Shown piece by piece: positions 15,987-23,150 of a stretch of DNA of 64,000 nt; position 1 is the stretch's first letter; each line of letters starts with the position of its first letter. Made by a program: the position numbers and the translations under genes. The DNA lies in contig JAADVB010000007.1 of NCBI GenBank assembly GCA_023334545.1, forward strand, positions 1 through 64,000. Direction: 5' to 3'. This stretch comes from Salisapilia sapeloensis CBS 127946 (Eukaryota > Protista > Oomycota). The notes under the pieces were generated by a model. The model ran no database searches. It saw only the letters and a list, made by a program, of their open reading frames with translations, and was not told the DNA's origin.

Positions 15987-16323
15987 GCTGTTTCCGACTT
16001 GTATTTATTTTTTGTCGTACTTGCTTTTCGTATATTCCAATAAAGTTCAAAATAAACGTACTTGATCGAAGCAATCGAGCTTTAGCGGGTGGAGCGTCAG
16101 TAACCTCAGTCATCATACCTCGTCTTAGTTCTACCGATCTGCTTTCGATAGATGGGTCGAACACAATACGAGAAAAGAGTAAGCTCGGCATCACTCTTAC
16201 CACTTCGTTTCCAATTTCATACTGTACCCGATCAAGTGGTACATAGACCGTGAGCTCTCTGGACTCCATCATTTCGTCTGAGCCTACGGACAATTGAATT
16301 TCGTCAATAGACCAGAAGCGATC

Positions 16324-17667
16324 ATGGCGTTGGCAGCATACGATCGCCTTCCAGAGAGACTGATGCTCACTGAAGACGAATCTGAGGCCTTTCGACACCA
16401 AGCTGGCGAACTGATATCGGAGACCGTCGAGGCATTCGAACGATTCGTGGACGACGGTCGACAGTTTTCACCATCGGATTGGAAGGTAGTCAAGAAAAGT
16501 GGCCGATTTACTGCATATCGAGACCGGTCACTTCGTAGTCGCGATCGACAAGAAGAGAGCTTTGTCTACACTGACCCTTCCATGCCAGAGTTGATTCCCT
16601 CACTGCGAGGGGTAGACGCAGATGTCTCGCTTCGGTCGAACTATAGCACGGTCTCTAGTCGCTATAGTCAATCCATGTTATCCTCTAAACCATCGCACAT
16701 GCCAGCTCTAGTCGCGTCTGGTACGGTTGATGGGACCGTGAATGAGTATCTACTCGGGACGCTAACGGATACGTCTACTCATCTACATCACGACTACTTT
16801 CGCAAAGTTTACATGGAAAATGATTTTGATTGCTGGAAAGTCTTGGCCGTGCTCGAGAGTCCATCCATGAATAGTTGCTTTCAGTATCTACGGATCATTT
16901 GGGCGGCAACAAGTCGTCCGATTCAGGACAAAATCGTATCGCCACGAGATTTTCTCATTCTGGAAGCGACCGGAACGCGGCCTGATCCGACCGGTAGTGG
17001 ACATCCACTTGGGTACCACCTGGGTCATACCATCTCTACCGATCAGATTCAACCATTTCCTCGAGTCATTCGCGCGGAGTTTTCCTTTTGTCATATCTTG
17101 CGACAAACGACATCAGATACGGTGGAAATGTATTCCCCAGGCTTTGTCAATCCATTCGGCAGAGTATTAGACGCGATGGCTTTGCACGTATCCATTCGAA
17201 TATTGTTCTCTACACCGACATTTATTGAAGCCGGCCGACGAAAGAAGCTTCAGTGGTTCACGGAACGAGTACAAGAAGATAAGAGGGAAATGGTGAAGAA
17301 GACAGAACGACTATCACGAAAGGATCCGGCCTATTGCAAATCCTGCGATAAGCGCATGAACAAAATCAAACCTTTGAAAGCAAAACGCCTATGTCAAATC
17401 TGCTCTGCCGTACGTGTCTACAGGCGCAAGCTCCAAAGCATTCTCAAATTAATGTTTCTGGTAACGTAGGTTGTCTGCTCCAAGTGTGGCATCATCAAGA
17501 CGTTGGTCCTAGGAGACGCCAAGCACGGATTCAGTCATGCTCCCCAACGCTTTTGCAAGGACTGCGTCAACCACGTCTACAAGTTGTCTGCCGAAGTCAT
17601 CGCGCTGGCGTCCACAGGCCCGATGCCAAGTGTCTCGTATAAAGTGCACGATAGCCGTTCCAAGTAG
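16324..17667 (+). CDS. START-like lipid-binding domain + FYVE-type zinc finger protein (oomycete-expanded family)
   Basis: WKVVKKSGRFTAYR, ASGTVDGTVNEYLLG, RDFLILEATG, then CKSC...KRLCQICSA|VVCSKC...FCKDC across an intron at about 17410-17469. The last exon end is uncertain. Confidence 0.75.
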
Positions 17668-18147
17668 GTACCTTCAATCTGGCGTTTGCACGTTAGTTAG
17701 CAATACGATGCAGCAGCGACCGTCAAGCCAGATAGTCTAGGTGATGGGAGCACTCGTGAACGCACTCTTGCGTACTCGCCCAAAGCTGCCGCGCGGAGCA
17801 GAAGAGGCGAAGGACGGACCTCGATCTCATAATATATATTAACATTGCTCTTGTGGTTTGTATGCACTCTGACGTCTGTTTTCCTTGACGTTTTCAGTGG
17901 CAAAAAGAAACACAAAAAACTTTTTTCCGAGAGCAGACCAGAGCCGTAGTAGAGCGCCGTGCCGAGTACAGCACTTCCTCTACATCGCCCTTGAGCATAT
18001 TTCGTAGAGTCTAGTACGTTCTGACACGGCCATTCATTCGTACGCCACCGTCCATTCTTCTCTTGACCGTGTACAACACTTTTTCCGCATCGTTTCTTTA
18101 CGCGCCGACCTGGCACTTGTTCCCTATCGTCCTACCAACTCTTCAGC

Positions 18148-20940
18148 ATGGATCCGTCTGAAGTCTCTGTCCTCGTGGTTGAAGACGATGAATTCACGCG
18201 CGTCGCCACGCTAGACATTCTCCGTTCCTGTCGTTATCAAGTAAGCATGATTTCTTCTATATGGTATAGAATATCTTGTTGATCGCGTCGCTACTAGGTG
18301 CAATCGGTCGATGATGGAAAGCAGGCACTTGATTTGCTACAGAACAACCATGGAAAGATCGATCTCGTCTTATGCGACGTCATGCTACCCGTCTTGAACG
18401 GCATTCAGCTGCTCGATGCGTTGCAGTCCGACGAAAACTCTGCGACGCTTGGGCACATTCCTGTTGTCATGACATCCTCCAACGAAGAAATGGATGTCGT
18501 CACGTCCTGTCTTAGTCGTGGTGCGAAAGACTACCTCATCAAGCCCATCCAAGTCAACACAGCCAAGACGCTCGTGCGCCACGTATGGCTCAGTCGAAAA
18601 CTTGAGAAACATGCGCCGAAAACCCTGTGGAAAGACATTGAGGTCATTCGTCGTATTGGCAAAGGCACCCACGGCACCGTTCAACTCGCTCGACGCAAGG
18701 TCGACGGAGCGGTGGTGGCCGTTAAACGTGTCAAACTGTCTGAAATTAGCGAGAACGGCCGAAAGCAGGCGGATAACGAGGTCATTCTGCTCAAGTCGCT
18801 GTATCACGTGAACATCGTGCGTTTTTACGACCATTTCCTGGCAGACGACGACCTTAACATTGTCATGGAATATGCGGACGGCGGCAATCTTCGGCAATTA
18901 GTGAAACGTCGTGTGAAAGATGGCATGGGTCCATTCCACGAATCGACGATCCTGTCATGGTTTGCTCAACTGGTGCTCGCCGTGTCCTACATTCACGGCA
19001 AGAACGTGCTCCATCGTGATTTAAAGGCACAAAATGTGTTCTTGACGCGTCGAAATGTGGTTAAATTGGGTGATTTTGGTATTTCCAAGGCACTTTCAGG
19101 AGATGAATCTGCCAATACTGCGTGCGGTACGCCTGAGAGCATGTCTCCTGAAATCTGCCGAGGTGAGCCGTATGGTAAAAAGTCGGACATTTGGAGTCTC
19201 GGATGTATCTTGTACGAAATGATCAACCTCGCCAGACCTTTTGAAGCATCCACTCTGCCTGAAATCTTCCAGAAAATTTGCAAGGGTGAATACCCACCCA
19301 TTCCAAACGGATTTTCACGTGAACTTCGACTGCTGGTGCAACTCATGCTGCAGCAAGACCAGTCGAAACGACCTTCGATTGAAGATATCTGTCGCTTTCC
19401 GTTCGTCCAGGCGCCAATCCAAGCGTTCTTGAACCAGCACGTTGCAGAGTTCCAAGAAGCTTTAGAGCTCGAAGCCAAGTTGCATCAACCGAATCGGAAT
19501 ACACAAAGCTCGGATGAGAACATGAACGCTCCGGCTAGTGTGAGTGAACAGTCTGGCGTGAGTGAGAACGCGACCGACGGTTCGAATAGTGAACAAGATG
19601 CGCCGAACAGTGTCGGAATCGGTCAATTCCAACCACCAGGATCCGTCGGTCGAAAGCAAATGCCTGGTGATCCGATGGAAGCAGTGAATGAAAAGTTTGC
19701 TCCTGCACCACTACGAGGTGAGGACAACGCGAATAGTCATTTGGCCGACTCGGCGATGGCATCTGCTGTCGTCGGTCTATCGGTTGAGTCGACGCCAGGT
19801 TTCCATCACCAAGCAAGCATGGACATTTCGTCCGACGTGAACCCTGGCATGGAAGACTCTGTTCTAGATGAAGTGCGAGCGCAACTGACCGTCGGATCCA
19901 TCCGCATCGGGTTCTTTACGACACATGCGAACTGTGTGTCCGCGACGGAACTCGTTGGCGTCCTCCATCGTCAGTTTGGAAAGACCGCGAAACAAGCTGG
20001 TGACTTGCTTCGACAGTACGTGTCCGCAGGAGACTTGCAAGTCGTTGCTGCGGAAGACCTTGATGCTCCAGACCTAGAACGACCGGACACGTTACTGCGT
20101 TTCCGCGTCGATGATGACAGCGTCCCGTTGAACCAACGCTATGCCTGTCCAGAGGAAATGAAAGGACAGAGCGCAATGGAGACTGCACTTAGTGTGCGTG
20201 AAGCCATGGCGGAGCTGCATGCGATGGATGAGTTCCCGTCCCGCATCTCGATGGGATTCCAGAAAGAAGACCAAGAGGCGCCTCCGTTCCACGCAGCGAT
20301 CTGTCGCCAGTACCGCAAGTTTGTTCGTTTGTCGAACGCCTTGCAGCACGTTGACATGAGCACGTTGCCGAAACACGAACGTCAGGCGTTCTTTATCAAT
20401 GTCTTCAACACGCAGGCTCTCCACGCTCTGATTGAGTTCGGTCGACCGGAGACGTTGAATGCCGTTCGAACGTTTGAAAGAGAAGCTAGATACGCGGTGG
20501 GCGGCCTGCTCTTCTCTCTCAGCGACATCAAGCACGGCATCCTTCGATGCAACAGGAAACCTCCGGCGAACTATTGGGAACGCCAGCTCCACGCGCAAGA
20601 CGCGCGGCTGCACTATATGCTGCACATTCGCGACCCGCGTAGTCTGCTTGTGCTGGTGGACTGCTCGGAGCCGGTGCCGCCACCAGAAGACGTTCCGATC
20701 CTCAAGCCTGGACGCACGGATACGGAGCTGGAGGAACAGGCGATGCGGTTTTGCTCGGAGAAGGTGGGTGTGGACCAGGACGCGATGGAGGTGTGGCTGC
20801 CGCGTCTGTTCCGGACGTTCCGAGACGACTTTGGCGCGTCGGAAGCTGAGATGGTGAGCTGGTTGGCTCAGTATATGGACGACGCGCCGAATGACTTGTA
20901 CAACTACAAGGTCAAGTTCCAAGCTGGGAGAGCAATGTAG
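18148..20940 (+). CDS. Response-regulator receiver - NIMA/NEK kinase - DEP-like - DUF547 fusion protein (2 exons)
   Basis: Exon 1 MDPSEVSVLVVEDDEFTRVATLDILRSCRYQ, intron 18241-18297. REC motifs DLVLCDVMLP, IPVVMTSS, YLIKP. Kinase motifs GKGTHG, VAVK, HRDLKAQNVFL, KLGDFGISK, KSDIWSLG. DEP-like CVSATELVGVL...LLRFR. DUF547 motifs AFFINVFN, YAVGGLLFSLSDIKHGILRCN. Confidence 0.9.
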
Positions 20941-22037
20941 GAGACTGCACAGGACTTTGATTGCATTTCGTCATAAGAAACATGGAAAAACGTAGGACGA
21001 GTTGGTGTGTTTTAACAAGGTGGAGGATGTCTGTATTGGGCAGAGCGAGTTGGAAGTGGACGGTGCGGAGGTCTGGTCATGACGAAATGGAGGTGAGTAG
21101 ACTAGGAAGTAAAGTGGTAGCACGTCTTTGCGTTTACTGGATGCGAATGCCATCGGATACTTGAAAAGGTGCAGGGTATCACTCTTCGGTTGTCCTGTCT
21201 GAGAGTAATTTCTCTAGTCGCACTAGGACTATCGGAAATTGAGAGACACGGTCAGATGACAAGAAGTAGAGTATTGATATGTTAAACTTCCTCTTTCTCG
21301 TTTTAGACACGAATGTATCATGATGTACGAAGTAGCTTGAAGTACTTCAAGTCCTTTTAGCGCTAATCCCCAGGAATGTTTACTTGTATGACCAGCTCAT
21401 TCTTGCCTTTCAGAAAATCGATAGAGAAAGTGCAGCATTCGTCTAGATAGATAGATGAGCATGTGCGTAGCCTGGAAGGTCACTCGGATAGCACCATGTG
21501 CTCGGACAAGAATGCAACCTCAAGTACAAATCTTTTCATTAGGAAAATTCAAAGGTAAGCTTTTTGTCTCATCCTTTGCCAGCAAATGAATTAAAGGACC
21601 GGTCGCGCTTCCTGATCTTTCAAAAGCGCTTTAGTGGAAACTTGGTGATAGCTGTCCATTTCAAAAGTATCGAAGCCCTCTACAAATTAATATATGTGTT
21701 AAAGTACGAAATATGATGTATCTTTACCATGGACAGCAAAAAAGCTTAAGAGAATAGTTGACTGCTTTAAGGATACACACATTTTAGTTATTCTTTATCT
21801 CTTCTTTGTCATCCTCTTGTTTAAAAACTTGCGTTATTTACGAGACCAAGGTGCAAGAGTAGCTACTTCTATAGCTGATAAAACGTTTTTACTAATATAT
21901 GAACATAGAAAGGTGGACACAACATCCGACAAGGCCAAAGGATCAGCCCAACAATTGATCTCGAGACCAATTTCTCGGCGAATTTCTTGTAAGTTCCCAG
22001 TCAAGCATCAGGTAACAAGACCCAAACTTTGACTACG

Positions 22038-22053
22038 TCATTTTCAAATTTCC
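22038..22053 (+). promoter_or_regulatory. Oomycete-type INR+FPR core promoter element
   Basis: TCATTTTCAAATTTCC about 40 nt upstream of the SMP-30 ATG; matches YCATTYY followed by a MWTTT-like FPR. Confidence 0.55.
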
Positions 22054-22091
22054 ATCCGAAGCGCAAGACGACATCTTTACAACCGCTCGCA

Positions 22092-23150
22092 ATGGCAAAC
22101 GACGAGTTATTCAAGCAGGAATCTCTTAGTGTCATCAACAATTTCATTCTACCGGGATGGCTCGGAGTCTGGCTCTACCGCTATCTAACACGCCGTGGAT
22201 CACTTCCAACGGACCCGAAAGTTGTCGTGGACAATCTCTACTTTTCTGAATGCCCACGTTTCCGCAGCACTGAAAACGCCTTGTACTTTAGCGACATCTT
22301 TGGCAAGAAGGTCATCAAGTACGACTTGGAAAGCCAGTCATCAAATGTAGTGGTCGAGTCCGATGACTACACTGGTGGTATCGGATGGCTACCTGATGGC
22401 ACCATGCTCGTTGTTGGAGCTGATAAACTTCAGCTTTTGAGTGTCAAACCTGACGAGACAGAAGTAAAACCGAAGCTGTATGCCAATCTGGAAAATTGTA
22501 CAAAGCATCGAGTGAATGACATGGTGGTGGCAAGTGACGGGCAAGCGTATGTAGGGAATTATGGCTTTAACTTCTTTTCTTCGTATTCTCCGATTTCGAC
22601 GACCCTTGTGAAAGTCGATACAGACCAGAACGTGACAGTGGAGTCGACACGGATGCTATTTCCAAATGGAAGCGTTATTACGCCAGATGGGAAAACGTTG
22701 TTAGTTGCAGAAACATTCCGTGCATCCATCGCTGCATTCGACATTAACGCCGACGGATCCTTGTCCAATCGACGCGAATGGGCCAACATTGGTCTTCCTC
22801 CCGATGGCATTACACTAGACGCAGAAGGTTGTGTCTGGGCAGCCATCCCACAAGTTGGTGGCTACTCAACCGCCGGTGGAATTGTTCGTGTCCAAGAAGG
22901 TGGCAAGATCCTATCATACTATGGATTCGGCGATAAAGGTATGACAGGCCATGTCGTGGCTTGCCAACTAGCAACGGATAAGAGCACTGGAAAGCACTTG
23001 CTCTTCTTCTGTGAATGCGAGAACGTCCCCAAGGAGATCATTTTCGCTATGGAAAAGCCTACAAGCAATGCGGTCGTAAAGGTGATGGAAGTCGAAGTTG
23101 GACCAGCGACCATGGAAGGCAACTCGAACTATAGTGGTGGATATTGCTAA
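22092..23150 (+). CDS. SMP-30/gluconolactonase (SGL) family six-bladed beta-propeller enzyme
   Basis: Intronless. FSECPRFR, LYFSDIFG, GIGWLPDG, RVNDMVVASDGQAYVGN, FPNGSVITPDGKTLLVAET, PDGITLDAEGCVW. Short hydrophobic N-terminal segment. Confidence 0.9.
   Translation: MANDELFKQESLSVINNFILPGWLGVWLYRYLTRRGSLPTDPKVVVDNLYFSECPRFRSTENALYFSDIFGKKVIKYDLESQSSNVVVESDDYTGGIGWLPDGTMLVVGADKLQLLSVKPDETEVKPKLYANLENCTKHRVNDMVVASDGQAYVGNYGFNFFSSYSPISTTLVKVDTDQNVTVESTRMLFPNGSVITPDGKTLLVAETFRASIAAFDINADGSLSNRREWANIGLPPDGITLDAEGCVWAAIPQVGGYSTAGGIVRVQEGGKILSYYGFGDKGMTGHVVACQLATDKSTGKHLLFFCECENVPKEIIFAMEKPTSNAVVKVMEVEVGPATMEGNSNYSGGYC

What the first reader, a model, noticed from the sequence alone, without database searches (positions are those of the whole stretch)
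18148..20940. Two-component receiver wired directly to a NIMA/NEK kinase, then DEP-like and DUF547 domains
Seen: a REC domain with all canonical residues intact (acid pocket EDD, phosphoacceptor D in LCDVMLP, S/T in MTSS, K in IKP), an intact NEK-like kinase, a disordered linker, a DEP-like fold and DUF547. Known: receivers are phosphorylated by His-kinase phosphorelays; NEKs control cilia and the cell cycle; DEP+DUF547 normally occur with glutaredoxin in plants and algae. Inference: one polypeptide converting a His-Asp phosphorelay input into NEK Ser/Thr output, possibly membrane-targeted through DEP. This would be a candidate regulator of zoospore/flagellar or hyphal development, and it is the most system-like locus in the window.
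Basis: partly seen in the sequence, partly recalled or inferred. Interest (0 to 1): 0.75.

Follow-up and report, generated by a model that had tools for sequence, protein, structure and literature searches.

The report
Receiver-fused NEK kinase gene of oomycetes
This is a real, expressed two-exon oomycete gene for one protein that joins a two-component receiver, a NEK-type Ser/Thr kinase, a DEP domain and a DUF547 domain. The P. infestans orthologue has been catalogued since 2010 but never studied, the family also occurs in ciliates and chromerid algae, and it is a plausible but untested output of the oomycete histidine-kinase relay.

Summary
The gene has an ATG at 18148, a 57-nt GT..AG intron at 18241-18297 and a stop at 20938-20940. 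Intron-less transcript contigs from four public runs cover the whole coding region, so receiver and kinase lie in one mRNA.

- **Domains.** Pfam finds Response_reg, Pkinase (nearest solved structures are NEK1, NEK7 and NEK2) and DUF547. The DEP domain is weak in Pfam but is confirmed by a family profile (DEPTOR, E 2e-8) and by fold (pleckstrin DEP, Z 10.6).
- **Residues.** All receiver and kinase catalytic residues are intact, and most are invariant in the orthologues aligned.
- **Not new as a kind.** Full-length orthologues exist in every oomycete order. The P. infestans orthologue PITG_03934 was tabulated in 2010 as a NEK with a receiver domain. I found no functional study.
- **New here.** The same architecture occurs in ciliates (Blepharisma, Paramecium), in chromerids (Chromera, Vitrella) and in an unidentified EukProt taxon.
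- **Against a flagellum-only role.** Hyaloperonospora, Peronospora and Bremia downy mildews keep the gene intact, and PITG_03934 mRNA is flat across hyphae, sporangia and zoospores.

The phosphorelay-to-NEK reading is plausible. Oomycete histidine kinases carry their own HPt domain, and the receiver most resembles the plant ARR1 receiver. It remains untested.

The parts
17826..18147 (+). 5' leader (approximate start). It contains an 8-codon uORF beginning near 17863.
   Evidence: Transcript contigs begin at 17854 (X1) and 17826 (X3). Contigs cannot define a true start. There is an in-frame stop and no ATG upstream of 18148.
18148..18240 (+). Exon 1: 31 codons holding receiver strand beta1 and helix alpha1, with the acidic pocket VVEDDEF.
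   Evidence: It matches the N-termini of the orthologues residue for residue.
18241..18297 (+). Intron, 57 nt, GTAAGC...CTACTAG, with in-frame stops.
   Evidence: Skipped exactly by contigs of four runs (table 5). Sequence.
18298..18597 (+). Remainder of the receiver domain (exon-2 aa 1-100). Phospho-acceptor Asp27 at 18376-18378, Ser/Thr of VMTSS, switch Tyr and Lys82 of DYLIKP (Lys at 18541-18543).
   Evidence: Pfam Response_reg 59.5 bits. D27, K82 and P83 are invariant in 13 sequences that include a ciliate and a chromerid. The closest solved receiver is Arabidopsis ARR1, 74.7 bits (query was orthologue P0005).
18598..18636 (+). Short receiver-kinase connector, poorly conserved.
   Evidence: 15-38% identity. 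The distance from HVW to GKGTHG is 23 residues in the Peronosporales/Pythiales-like sequences, 30-36 in Saprolegniales and 36-54 in Albugo.
18637..19407 (+). NEK-family kinase domain (aa 114-370). Catalytic Lys143 at 18724-18726, HRD Asp241 at 19018-19020, DFG Asp259 at 19072-19074, activation-loop Thr274 at 19117-19119, P+1 loop GTPESMSPE at 19126-19152.
   Evidence: Pkinase 225 bits. PDB scores: NEK1 212, NEK7 187, NEK2 180 bits, against 146 for the next family. 79-88% identical to oomycete orthologues.
19408..19512 (+). Conserved helical extension after the kinase (aa 371-405).
   Evidence: 49-74% identity within oomycetes. Helices are predicted at the equivalent place in the P0005 model.
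19513..19854 (+). Variable, low-complexity linker.
   Evidence: 9-24% identity and variable length.
19855..20124 (+). DEP domain (aa about 520-609).
   Evidence: VIA-align: pleckstrin DEP Z 10.6, rmsd 2.4 over 88 residues; P-Rex1 10.3; Epac2 9.5; DEPTOR 9.0. Family profile against DEPTOR, E 1.9e-8. Pfam DEP is below threshold for the window piece and above threshold in P0050, P0155, P0164, P0262 and P0277.
20125..20358 (+). Helical connector between DEP and DUF547.
   Evidence: Model helices H112-127 and H152-170. 33-47% identity within oomycetes.
20359..20751 (+). DUF547 domain (aa 688-818), with the conserved motifs FFINVFN, HGILRCNRKPP and RDPRSLL.
   Evidence: Pfam DUF547 83.2 bits against a cut-off of 27. 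Motifs are nearly invariant. No solved relative was found.
20752..20940 (+). C-terminal tail that packs with DUF547 in the model, then the stop codon (20938-20940).
20941..21175 (+). 3' UTR (approximate end).
   Evidence: Contigs end at, or change at, 21072 and 21175.

Best explanation
The locus is the orthologue, in an unidentified oomycete, of a conserved single-copy signalling protein. In P. infestans it is PITG_03934, annotated 'NEK protein kinase'. The protein has four modules: a receiver with a full phospho-accepting Asp pocket, a NEK-family Ser/Thr kinase, a DEP domain and a DUF547 domain.

The most likely mechanism is inferred, not shown. The receiver is a terminal acceptor of the oomycete His-Asp relay. 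The soluble multi-PAS hybrid histidine kinases carry their own receiver and HPt domain, and the HPt passes phosphate to Asp27 (exon-2 numbering). The phosphorylated receiver then changes kinase output. It could do this by releasing an inhibitory contact or by dimerising and so promoting trans-autophosphorylation of activation-loop Thr274. DEP and DUF547 would place the kinase at a membrane or G-protein-signalling site or dock substrates.

Control is probably post-translational and not tied to one life stage. The family predates oomycetes.
For: - **Gene and mRNA shown.** Spliced contigs of four runs span all four domains.
- **Domains shown.**
- **Receiver.** Acidic pair, Asp27, the hydroxyl residue, the switch Tyr and Lys82-Pro83 are all intact. 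Asp, Lys and Pro are invariant in 13 sequences from oomycetes, a ciliate, a chromerid and others. The (beta-alpha)5 fold is modelled at pLDDT about 90 in orthologue P0005. The closest solved receiver is the HPt-dependent plant ARR1, at 74.7 bits against no more than 62 for bacterial receivers.
- **Kinase.** Catalytic residues are intact and the domain is 79-88% conserved across oomycete orders, which indicates strong purifying selection.
- **Upstream partners exist.** P. infestans and Albugo histidine kinases have the layout PAS array, HisKA, HATPase, receiver, HPt. Knock-out of one P. sojae histidine kinase abolishes zoospore chemotaxis.
- **Phyletic fit.** The family was found in ciliates, chromerids and oomycetes, lineages that have histidine kinases. 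It was not among the hits from apicomplexans or dinoflagellates, which lack them.
- **Flat mRNA.** The P. infestans orthologue is near-constant across stages, which fits post-translational control.
Against: - No experiment on any member was found.
- The AlphaFold model of receiver plus kinase has pTM 0.57 and a low-confidence connector, so no receiver-kinase interface can be read from it.
- The connector length varies from 22 to 54 residues among lineages. This argues against rigid helical coupling.
- Diatoms and brown algae have histidine kinases, yet no member turned up there. My searches cannot show absence.
- Other receiver-like proteins exist in this genome (unchecked notes), so this need not be the only or the main acceptor.
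- The function of DUF547 is unknown.
Confidence: 0.55

Rival explanations
1. The receiver no longer takes part in phosphotransfer. It acts as a constitutive dimerisation or scaffold domain, like plant pseudo-response regulators, and the NEK is controlled by activation-loop phosphorylation from other kinases.
For: NEKs are generally activated by dimerisation and autophosphorylation (general knowledge). The connector length varies. The paralogue P0155 in the EukProt taxon has a degenerate acidic pocket, D-G-N. Many receiver-like domains noted in this genome were read as pseudo-receivers (unchecked).
Against: Every residue needed for Asp phosphorylation is kept. The acceptor Asp and the Lys-Pro are invariant from oomycetes to ciliates and chromerids. 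Pseudo-receivers normally lose them.
Confidence: 0.2
2. The receiver controls the DEP-DUF547 end, that is localisation or partner binding, and not catalysis. Alternatively the protein acts mainly as a phosphate sink or scaffold for the histidine-kinase pathway.
For: The DEP-DUF547 module is an independent unit found with glutaredoxin, with RGS, or alone. A long flexible linker separates it from the kinase.
Against: The receiver sits directly next to the kinase, 22-54 residues away, in all members. The kinase is the best-conserved part.
Confidence: 0.12
3. It is a flagellum- or zoospore-specific NEK.
For: NEKs of Chlamydomonas and Tetrahymena regulate cilia. The histidine-kinase knock-out affects zoospore chemotaxis. 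Family members occur in ciliates.
Against: Intact orthologues are present in Hyaloperonospora, Peronospora and Bremia; the kinome paper notes that the downy mildew H. arabidopsidis lacks zoospores. The mRNA is flat in hyphae, sporangia and zoospores of P. infestans.
Confidence: 0.1
4. The four-domain protein is an artefact of gene prediction that merges neighbouring genes.
For: None beyond the in-frame stops between 18241 and 18297.
Against: Spliced transcript contigs join exon 1 to exon 2 and run to the stop. Exon 2 is a single 880-codon ORF. About 50 orthologues have the same layout.
Confidence: 0.01

Closest known systems
Oomycete 'NEK protein kinase' orthologues, e.g. P. infestans PITG_03934 and P. 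sojae PHYSODRAFT_551172
   Same: Same four-domain layout, same length (about 880-900 aa), 49-64% identity overall. Receiver and kinase motifs are identical, including the P+1 loop GTPESMSPE.
   Different: Only species-level divergence. The 2010 kinome table lists only 'ResponseReg' as the accessory domain and not DEP or DUF547. No function is known.
Ciliate and chromerid receiver-NEK-DEP-DUF547 proteins (Blepharisma stoltei CAG9330490, Paramecium, Chromera velia Cvel_4985, Vitrella)
   Same: Same domain order. The receiver Asp and Lys-Pro are invariant.
   Different: 27-31% identity over the full length in the family alignment; 37-42% over receiver plus kinase. They keep an aromatic or Leu residue in the P+1 loop (GTPY.., GTPL..) where oomycetes have Glu. 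In the kinase tree they group apart from the oomycete clade, which sits on a long stem, and a single origin is unresolved.
Human NEK1 and NEK5 (NEK1/3/5 group) and other NEKs
   Same: The kinase domain is most similar to NEK1 (212 bits), with an activation-loop Thr at the NEK position. The best human match of PITG_03934 is NEK5.
   Different: In most NEKs the kinase domain is at the N-terminus; here a receiver precedes it. The P+1 loop is GTPESMSPE, not GTPYY.SPE. Phe replaces the 'Tyr-down' residue of NEK2 and NEK7; this residue's position and role are recalled from memory, while the motif NIVRFYD is.
Arabidopsis type-B response regulator ARR1 (receiver domain)
   Same: It is the closest solved receiver (E 7e-20), sharing the D-D-K residues and the DYLIKP motif. 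ARR1 is phosphorylated by HPt proteins (general knowledge).
   Different: The output of ARR1 is a Myb-type DNA-binding domain, not a kinase.
Response-regulator control of Ser/Thr kinases in trans: yeast Ssk1 to Ssk2/22 MAPKKK, plant ETR1 to CTR1
   Same: In both, a His-Asp relay is converted to Ser/Thr kinase output (general knowledge; the principle is mentioned).
   Different: There the receiver and the kinase are separate proteins, and the kinases are MAPKKK or Raf-like, not NEK.
Plant class IV glutaredoxins (GRX-DEP-DUF547)
   Same: They share the DEP-DUF547 module. Structural matches have TM by query 0.63-0.68.
   Different: Their N-terminal partner is a glutaredoxin, not receiver plus kinase. 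They too are uncharacterised.

Membership tests
Response regulator receiver (REC, PF00072) | Profile match above the curated threshold | tested here: met
   59.5 bits against a cut-off of 30.2, on exon 2 alone. Orthologues with exon 1 included score 82-95 bits.
Response regulator receiver (REC, PF00072) | Acidic pair, phospho-acceptor Asp, Thr/Ser, switch aromatic residue and Lys-Pro | tested here: met
   The motifs are VVEDDEF, LCDVMLP, VMTSS and DYLIKP. Asp, Lys and Pro are invariant in alignments A2 and A3.
Response regulator receiver (REC, PF00072) | (beta-alpha)5 fold | tested here: met
   The model of orthologue P0005 shows five strands alternating with five helices at pLDDT about 80-96. 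The window's own joined protein was not folded.
Response regulator receiver (REC, PF00072) | Actual phosphotransfer from a His donor | not testable with these tools
   This needs biochemistry.
NEK (NIMA-related) kinases | Kinase domain closer to NEKs than to any other kinase family | tested here: met
   NEK1 212, NEK7 187 and NEK2 180 bits, against SIK3/MARK at 146 or less. PITG_03934 was placed in OTHER/NEK by the kinome paper, which assigned families by phylogenetic analysis against human ePKs.
NEK (NIMA-related) kinases | Intact catalytic residues (GxGxxG, VAIK Lys, alphaC Glu, HRD, DFG, APE) | tested here: met
NEK (NIMA-related) kinases | Kinase domain at the N-terminus and a GTPYY.SPE P+1 loop | tested here: not met
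   A receiver precedes the kinase. The loop reads GTPESMSPE in all oomycete orthologues aligned. These features are typical of NEKs, not strictly defining.
NEK (NIMA-related) kinases | Placement in a named NEK subclade | tested here: inconclusive
   The quick ML tree leaves the oomycete clade in an open polytomy with the other NEKs.
DEP domain (PF00610) | Profile match above the curated threshold | tested here: not met
   The window piece scores 12.8 bits against a cut-off of 32.7. P0004 scores 25 and P0005 27. P0050 (36), P0155 (44), P0262 (38) and P0277 (45) pass.
DEP domain (PF00610) | Homology by family profile, and the DEP fold | tested here: met
   Profile A1 against DEPTOR DEP gives E 1.9e-8. 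The top 11 structural matches are all DEP domains, ten of them at Z 8.2-10.6 (the eleventh 7.1), above generic winged helices.
DUF547 (PF04784) | Profile match above the curated threshold | tested here: met
   83.2 bits against a cut-off of 27, covering profile positions 2-124 of 125.

The most novel reading that the evidence does not exclude
The receiver-NEK-DEP-DUF547 protein is the main terminal response regulator of an ancient His-Asp phosphorelay shared by stramenopiles and alveolates. It would couple multi-PAS or other hybrid histidine kinases, through HPt, directly to NEK-type control of microtubules or the cell cycle. In oomycetes it would be the missing step between the histidine kinase needed for zoospore chemotaxis and the cytoskeleton.
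Probability: 0.3. Interest if true: 0.75.

Novelty: new member of a known kind. Interest (0 to 1): 0.5.

Why it matters
In the papers I could search, nothing is described downstream of the oomycete histidine kinases. One of them is required for P. sojae zoospore chemotaxis.

This gene is a canonical, strongly conserved receiver fused to a kinase, so the downstream question becomes directly testable. The tests are phosphotransfer assays, Asp mutants and epistasis with the histidine-kinase knock-out.

The same architecture occurs in ciliates and chromerids. That suggests an old and unstudied route from two-component signalling to Ser/Thr phosphorylation in protists. It also gives the uncharacterised DEP-DUF547 module, which plant class IV glutaredoxins share, a second context in which to study it.

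Oomycetes include major crop and animal pathogens, and the pathway has no animal counterpart.

Tried and rejected
- **C-terminal half against PDB sequences (phmmer).** No hit. Only the family profile reached DEP.
- **Foldseek on the C-terminal model.** It gave DEP domains only at weak E-values of 0.02 or more. VIA-align was needed.
- **DUF547 fold.** I do not claim a new fold.
- **Word-based search with the C-terminal half.** It found only oomycete orthologues.
- **Receiver-plus-kinase model of P0005.** It came out at pTM 0.57, so I draw no conclusion on domain docking.
- **Literature.** I found no papers for PITG_03934 or PHYSODRAFT_551172, for the GILJ/GILK accessions, or for a receiver-NEK fusion. 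PMC1474788 (Tetrahymena NEKs) is not held.
- **PeerJ survey of two-component proteins.** It has no usable oomycete data.
- **Gene-fusion artefact.** Considered and rejected.
- **Immediate neighbours.** An ORF with no Pfam match lies at 16294-17469 and an SMP-30/gluconolactonase gene at 22029-23150. They are unrelated to signalling, so there is no operon-like context.
- **Organism.** The species was not identified. The best orthologues are only 62-64% identical.
Full report
**Gene model**

The stretch 18148-20940 holds a two-exon gene on the + strand.
- The ATG is at 18148. An in-frame stop lies upstream of it with no intervening ATG.
- Exon 1 is 31 codons and ends ...SCRYQ at 18240.
- A 57-nt intron (18241-18297, GTAAGC...CTACTAG) carries in-frame stops.
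- Exon 2 is a single 880-codon ORF that ends at the stop at 20938-20940.

Public runs settle the model. Contigs of 3.3-3.5 kb from runs X1, X2 and X3 are identical to the window, and a 3.0-kb contig from X5 comes from a roughly 96% identical relative. All four are colinear with the window from about 17826/17854 to 21072/21175, except that they skip exactly 18241-18297.

The runs are only guessed to be RNA. A GT..AG skip that the genomic window does not have can only come from spliced RNA. So the receiver, kinase, DEP and DUF547 coding parts lie on one mRNA, and exon 2 has no further intron.

Exon 2 was searched by reference. Exon 1 is too short to hit Pfam. Orthologues stood in where a complete N-terminus was needed.

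**Domains**

- **Pfam on exon 2.** Response_reg scores 59.5 bits over profile positions 26-107, with the missing beta1-alpha1 in exon 1. Pkinase scores 225 bits and DUF547 83 bits.
- **Kinase family.** The kinase is closest to NEK1 (212 bits), NEK7 (187) and NEK2 (180). SIK3 and MARK follow at 146 bits or less.
- **DEP by sequence.** The DEP claim was the weakest. The window's own piece scores only 12.8 bits. A profile of 26 family members hits the first DEP domain of DEPTOR at E 1.9e-8.
- **DEP by fold.** An AlphaFold model of the C-terminal 366 residues has mean pLDDT 83 and pTM 0.83. Its first 95 residues match pleckstrin, P-Rex1, Epac2, DEPTOR, Dishevelled and RGS7 DEP domains at Z 8.2-10.6. 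Generic winged helices score no more than 7.1.
- **DUF547.** It has no solved relative by sequence and no clear structural match. I could not fold it alone, so this is not evidence of a new fold.

**Residues**

An alignment with 38 homologues, 37 of them oomycete orthologues, and the tool alignments give the following.
- **Receiver.** The receiver keeps the acidic pair (VVEDDEF), the acceptor Asp (LCDVMLP), the hydroxyl residue (VMTSS), the switch Tyr and the Lys-Pro (DYLIKP).
- **Kinase.** The kinase keeps GKGTHG, VAVK, the alphaC Glu, HRDLKAQN, DFG, an activation-loop Thr (ANTACGTP) and SPE.
- **Conservation by part, within oomycetes.** Kinase 79-88%, receiver 69-81%, DUF547 57-70%, DEP 22-47%, and the linker between kinase and DEP 14-24%.
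- **Two oomycete-specific departures from NEK norms.** The P+1 loop reads GTPESMSPE, against GTPY../GTPF../GTPL.. in non-oomycete members. The motif NIVRFYD has Phe where NEK2 and NEK7 have an autoinhibitory Tyr; that Tyr's role and position are from memory.
- Both departures are fixed in every oomycete order. They are derived features of a functional kinase, not decay.

**Is it known?**

Full-length orthologues with the same architecture occur in Phytophthora, Pythium, Globisporangium, Lagenidium, Hyaloperonospora, Peronospora, Bremia, Plasmopara, Albugo, Aphanomyces, Saprolegnia, Achlya and Thraustotheca. Several are named 'NEK protein kinase'.

The P. infestans kinome paper (PMC3019232) counts one kinase of the OTHER group with a 'Response Reg' domain. 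Its Table S1 identifies it as PITG_03934: NEK, 897 aa, 'ResponseReg', best human match NEK5.

It is not among the six combinations that paper calls novel, and it is not discussed there. DEP and DUF547 are not listed for it. No paper in the library names PITG_03934 or the P. sojae orthologue in its main text, and I found none that describes a receiver-NEK fusion. So the kind is catalogued but uncharacterised, and the window holds a new member.

**Range beyond oomycetes**

I ran an exhaustive HMMER search with receiver plus kinase, a profile search, Pfam scans and name look-ups. They show the same architecture in:
- the ciliates Blepharisma stoltei (all four domains above Pfam thresholds) and Paramecium;
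- the chromerids Chromera velia and Vitrella brassicaformis;
- several metagenomic proteins;
- two paralogues of an unidentified EukProt taxon (GILJ/GILK).

A Chlorokybus protein has NEK, DEP and DUF547, but its model is cut at the N-terminus, so its receiver status is unknown. The acceptor Asp and the Lys-Pro are invariant across all 13 sequences aligned.

In a quick kinase-domain tree, the oomycete proteins form one clade (SH-aLRT 100) on a long stem, and all 13 other receiver-NEKs form another (SH-aLRT 89). The two clades join the remaining NEKs in an unresolved polytomy. A single origin is therefore neither shown nor rejected.

**Mechanism**

The receiver looks like a working acceptor, and its nearest solved relative is the HPt-fed plant ARR1 receiver.

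Oomycete histidine kinases are unusual in carrying PAS arrays plus HisKA, HATPase, a receiver and their own HPt domain. That layout calls for a separate terminal receiver. Knock-out of one in P. sojae abolishes zoospore chemotaxis.

The family was found in lineages that have histidine kinases (ciliates, chromerids, oomycetes). It was not among the hits from apicomplexans or dinoflagellates, which lack them. This is suggestive only.

I therefore favour HK-HPt phosphotransfer to Asp27 that switches NEK output, at about 0.55. DEP and DUF547 would target the protein. DUF547 also occurs with RGS, DEP and glutaredoxin, which hints at membrane or G-protein signalling.

How the receiver acts on the kinase is open. 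The connector varies from 22 to 54 residues, and the two-domain model is not confident about orientation. Release of inhibition and dimerisation-driven autophosphorylation are both possible.

A flagellar or zoospore-specific role is unlikely.
- Hyaloperonospora, Peronospora and Bremia keep intact, equally conserved orthologues. The kinome paper notes that the downy mildew H. arabidopsidis lacks zoospores; the status of the other genera is my own knowledge.
- PITG_03934 mRNA is nearly constant in hyphae, sporangia and zoospores: 1.31, 0.78 and 0.94, per-gene normalised.

**Surroundings**

The neighbours are an ORF with no Pfam match (16294-17469) and an SMP-30/gluconolactonase gene (22029-23150). 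Nothing suggests a linked system.

**Verdict**

The gene is a new member of a catalogued but unstudied family. It is of moderate interest, mainly as a testable candidate output of the oomycete, and possibly wider protist, His-Asp relay.

Noticed in passing
window 21073-21137: One transcript contig (X3) that continues past the gene's 3' end skips 65 nt with CT..AC ends, which is a GT..AG intron on the minus strand. No ORF of 70 aa or more lies between 20960 and 22000. This may be an overlapping antisense or non-coding transcript, or the UTR of a neighbour.
   Followed up: partly
window about 17863-17889: An 8-codon upstream ORF lies in the roughly 300-nt 5' leader of the gene. The contig of run X2 runs on upstream of 17700, so the leader may overlap the 3' end of the upstream gene's transcript.
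   Followed up: no
window 19126-19152 and 18817-18837: There are two oomycete-specific changes in the NEK domain. The P+1 loop reads GTPESMSPE, with Glu-Ser where NEKs have Tyr-Tyr. The motif NIVRFYD has Phe at the position of the NEK2/NEK7 autoinhibitory Tyr. Both are fixed in all oomycete orders and absent from the ciliate, chromerid and EukProt members.
   Followed up: partly
run X5 laid on window 17941-20991: A second organism ('organism B', runs from 2025) carries the same gene at about 96% identity with the same intron. Nearly all the differences listed fall at multiples of 3 from the exon-2 start, i.e. at third codon positions.
   Followed up: no
P0023 and P0026 (Albugo candida); P0050 and P0155 (EukProt GILJ taxon): Albugo and the unidentified EukProt taxon each have two paralogues. 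P0155 has a degenerate acidic pocket (VDGNE), so one copy may have become a pseudo-receiver.
   Followed up: no
P0277 (Chlorokybus atmophyticus): A streptophyte alga has a kinase-DEP-DUF547 protein. Its kinase domain starts at profile position 51, so the gene model is probably cut short at the N-terminus. Whether it has a receiver is unknown. Its kinase does not group with the receiver-NEK clades.
   Followed up: partly
   Followed up: partly
window 16294-17469: The upstream 391-codon ORF has no Pfam match at E 0.001 or below. Its C-terminal end is Cys-rich (CKSCDK...CQICS).
   Followed up: no
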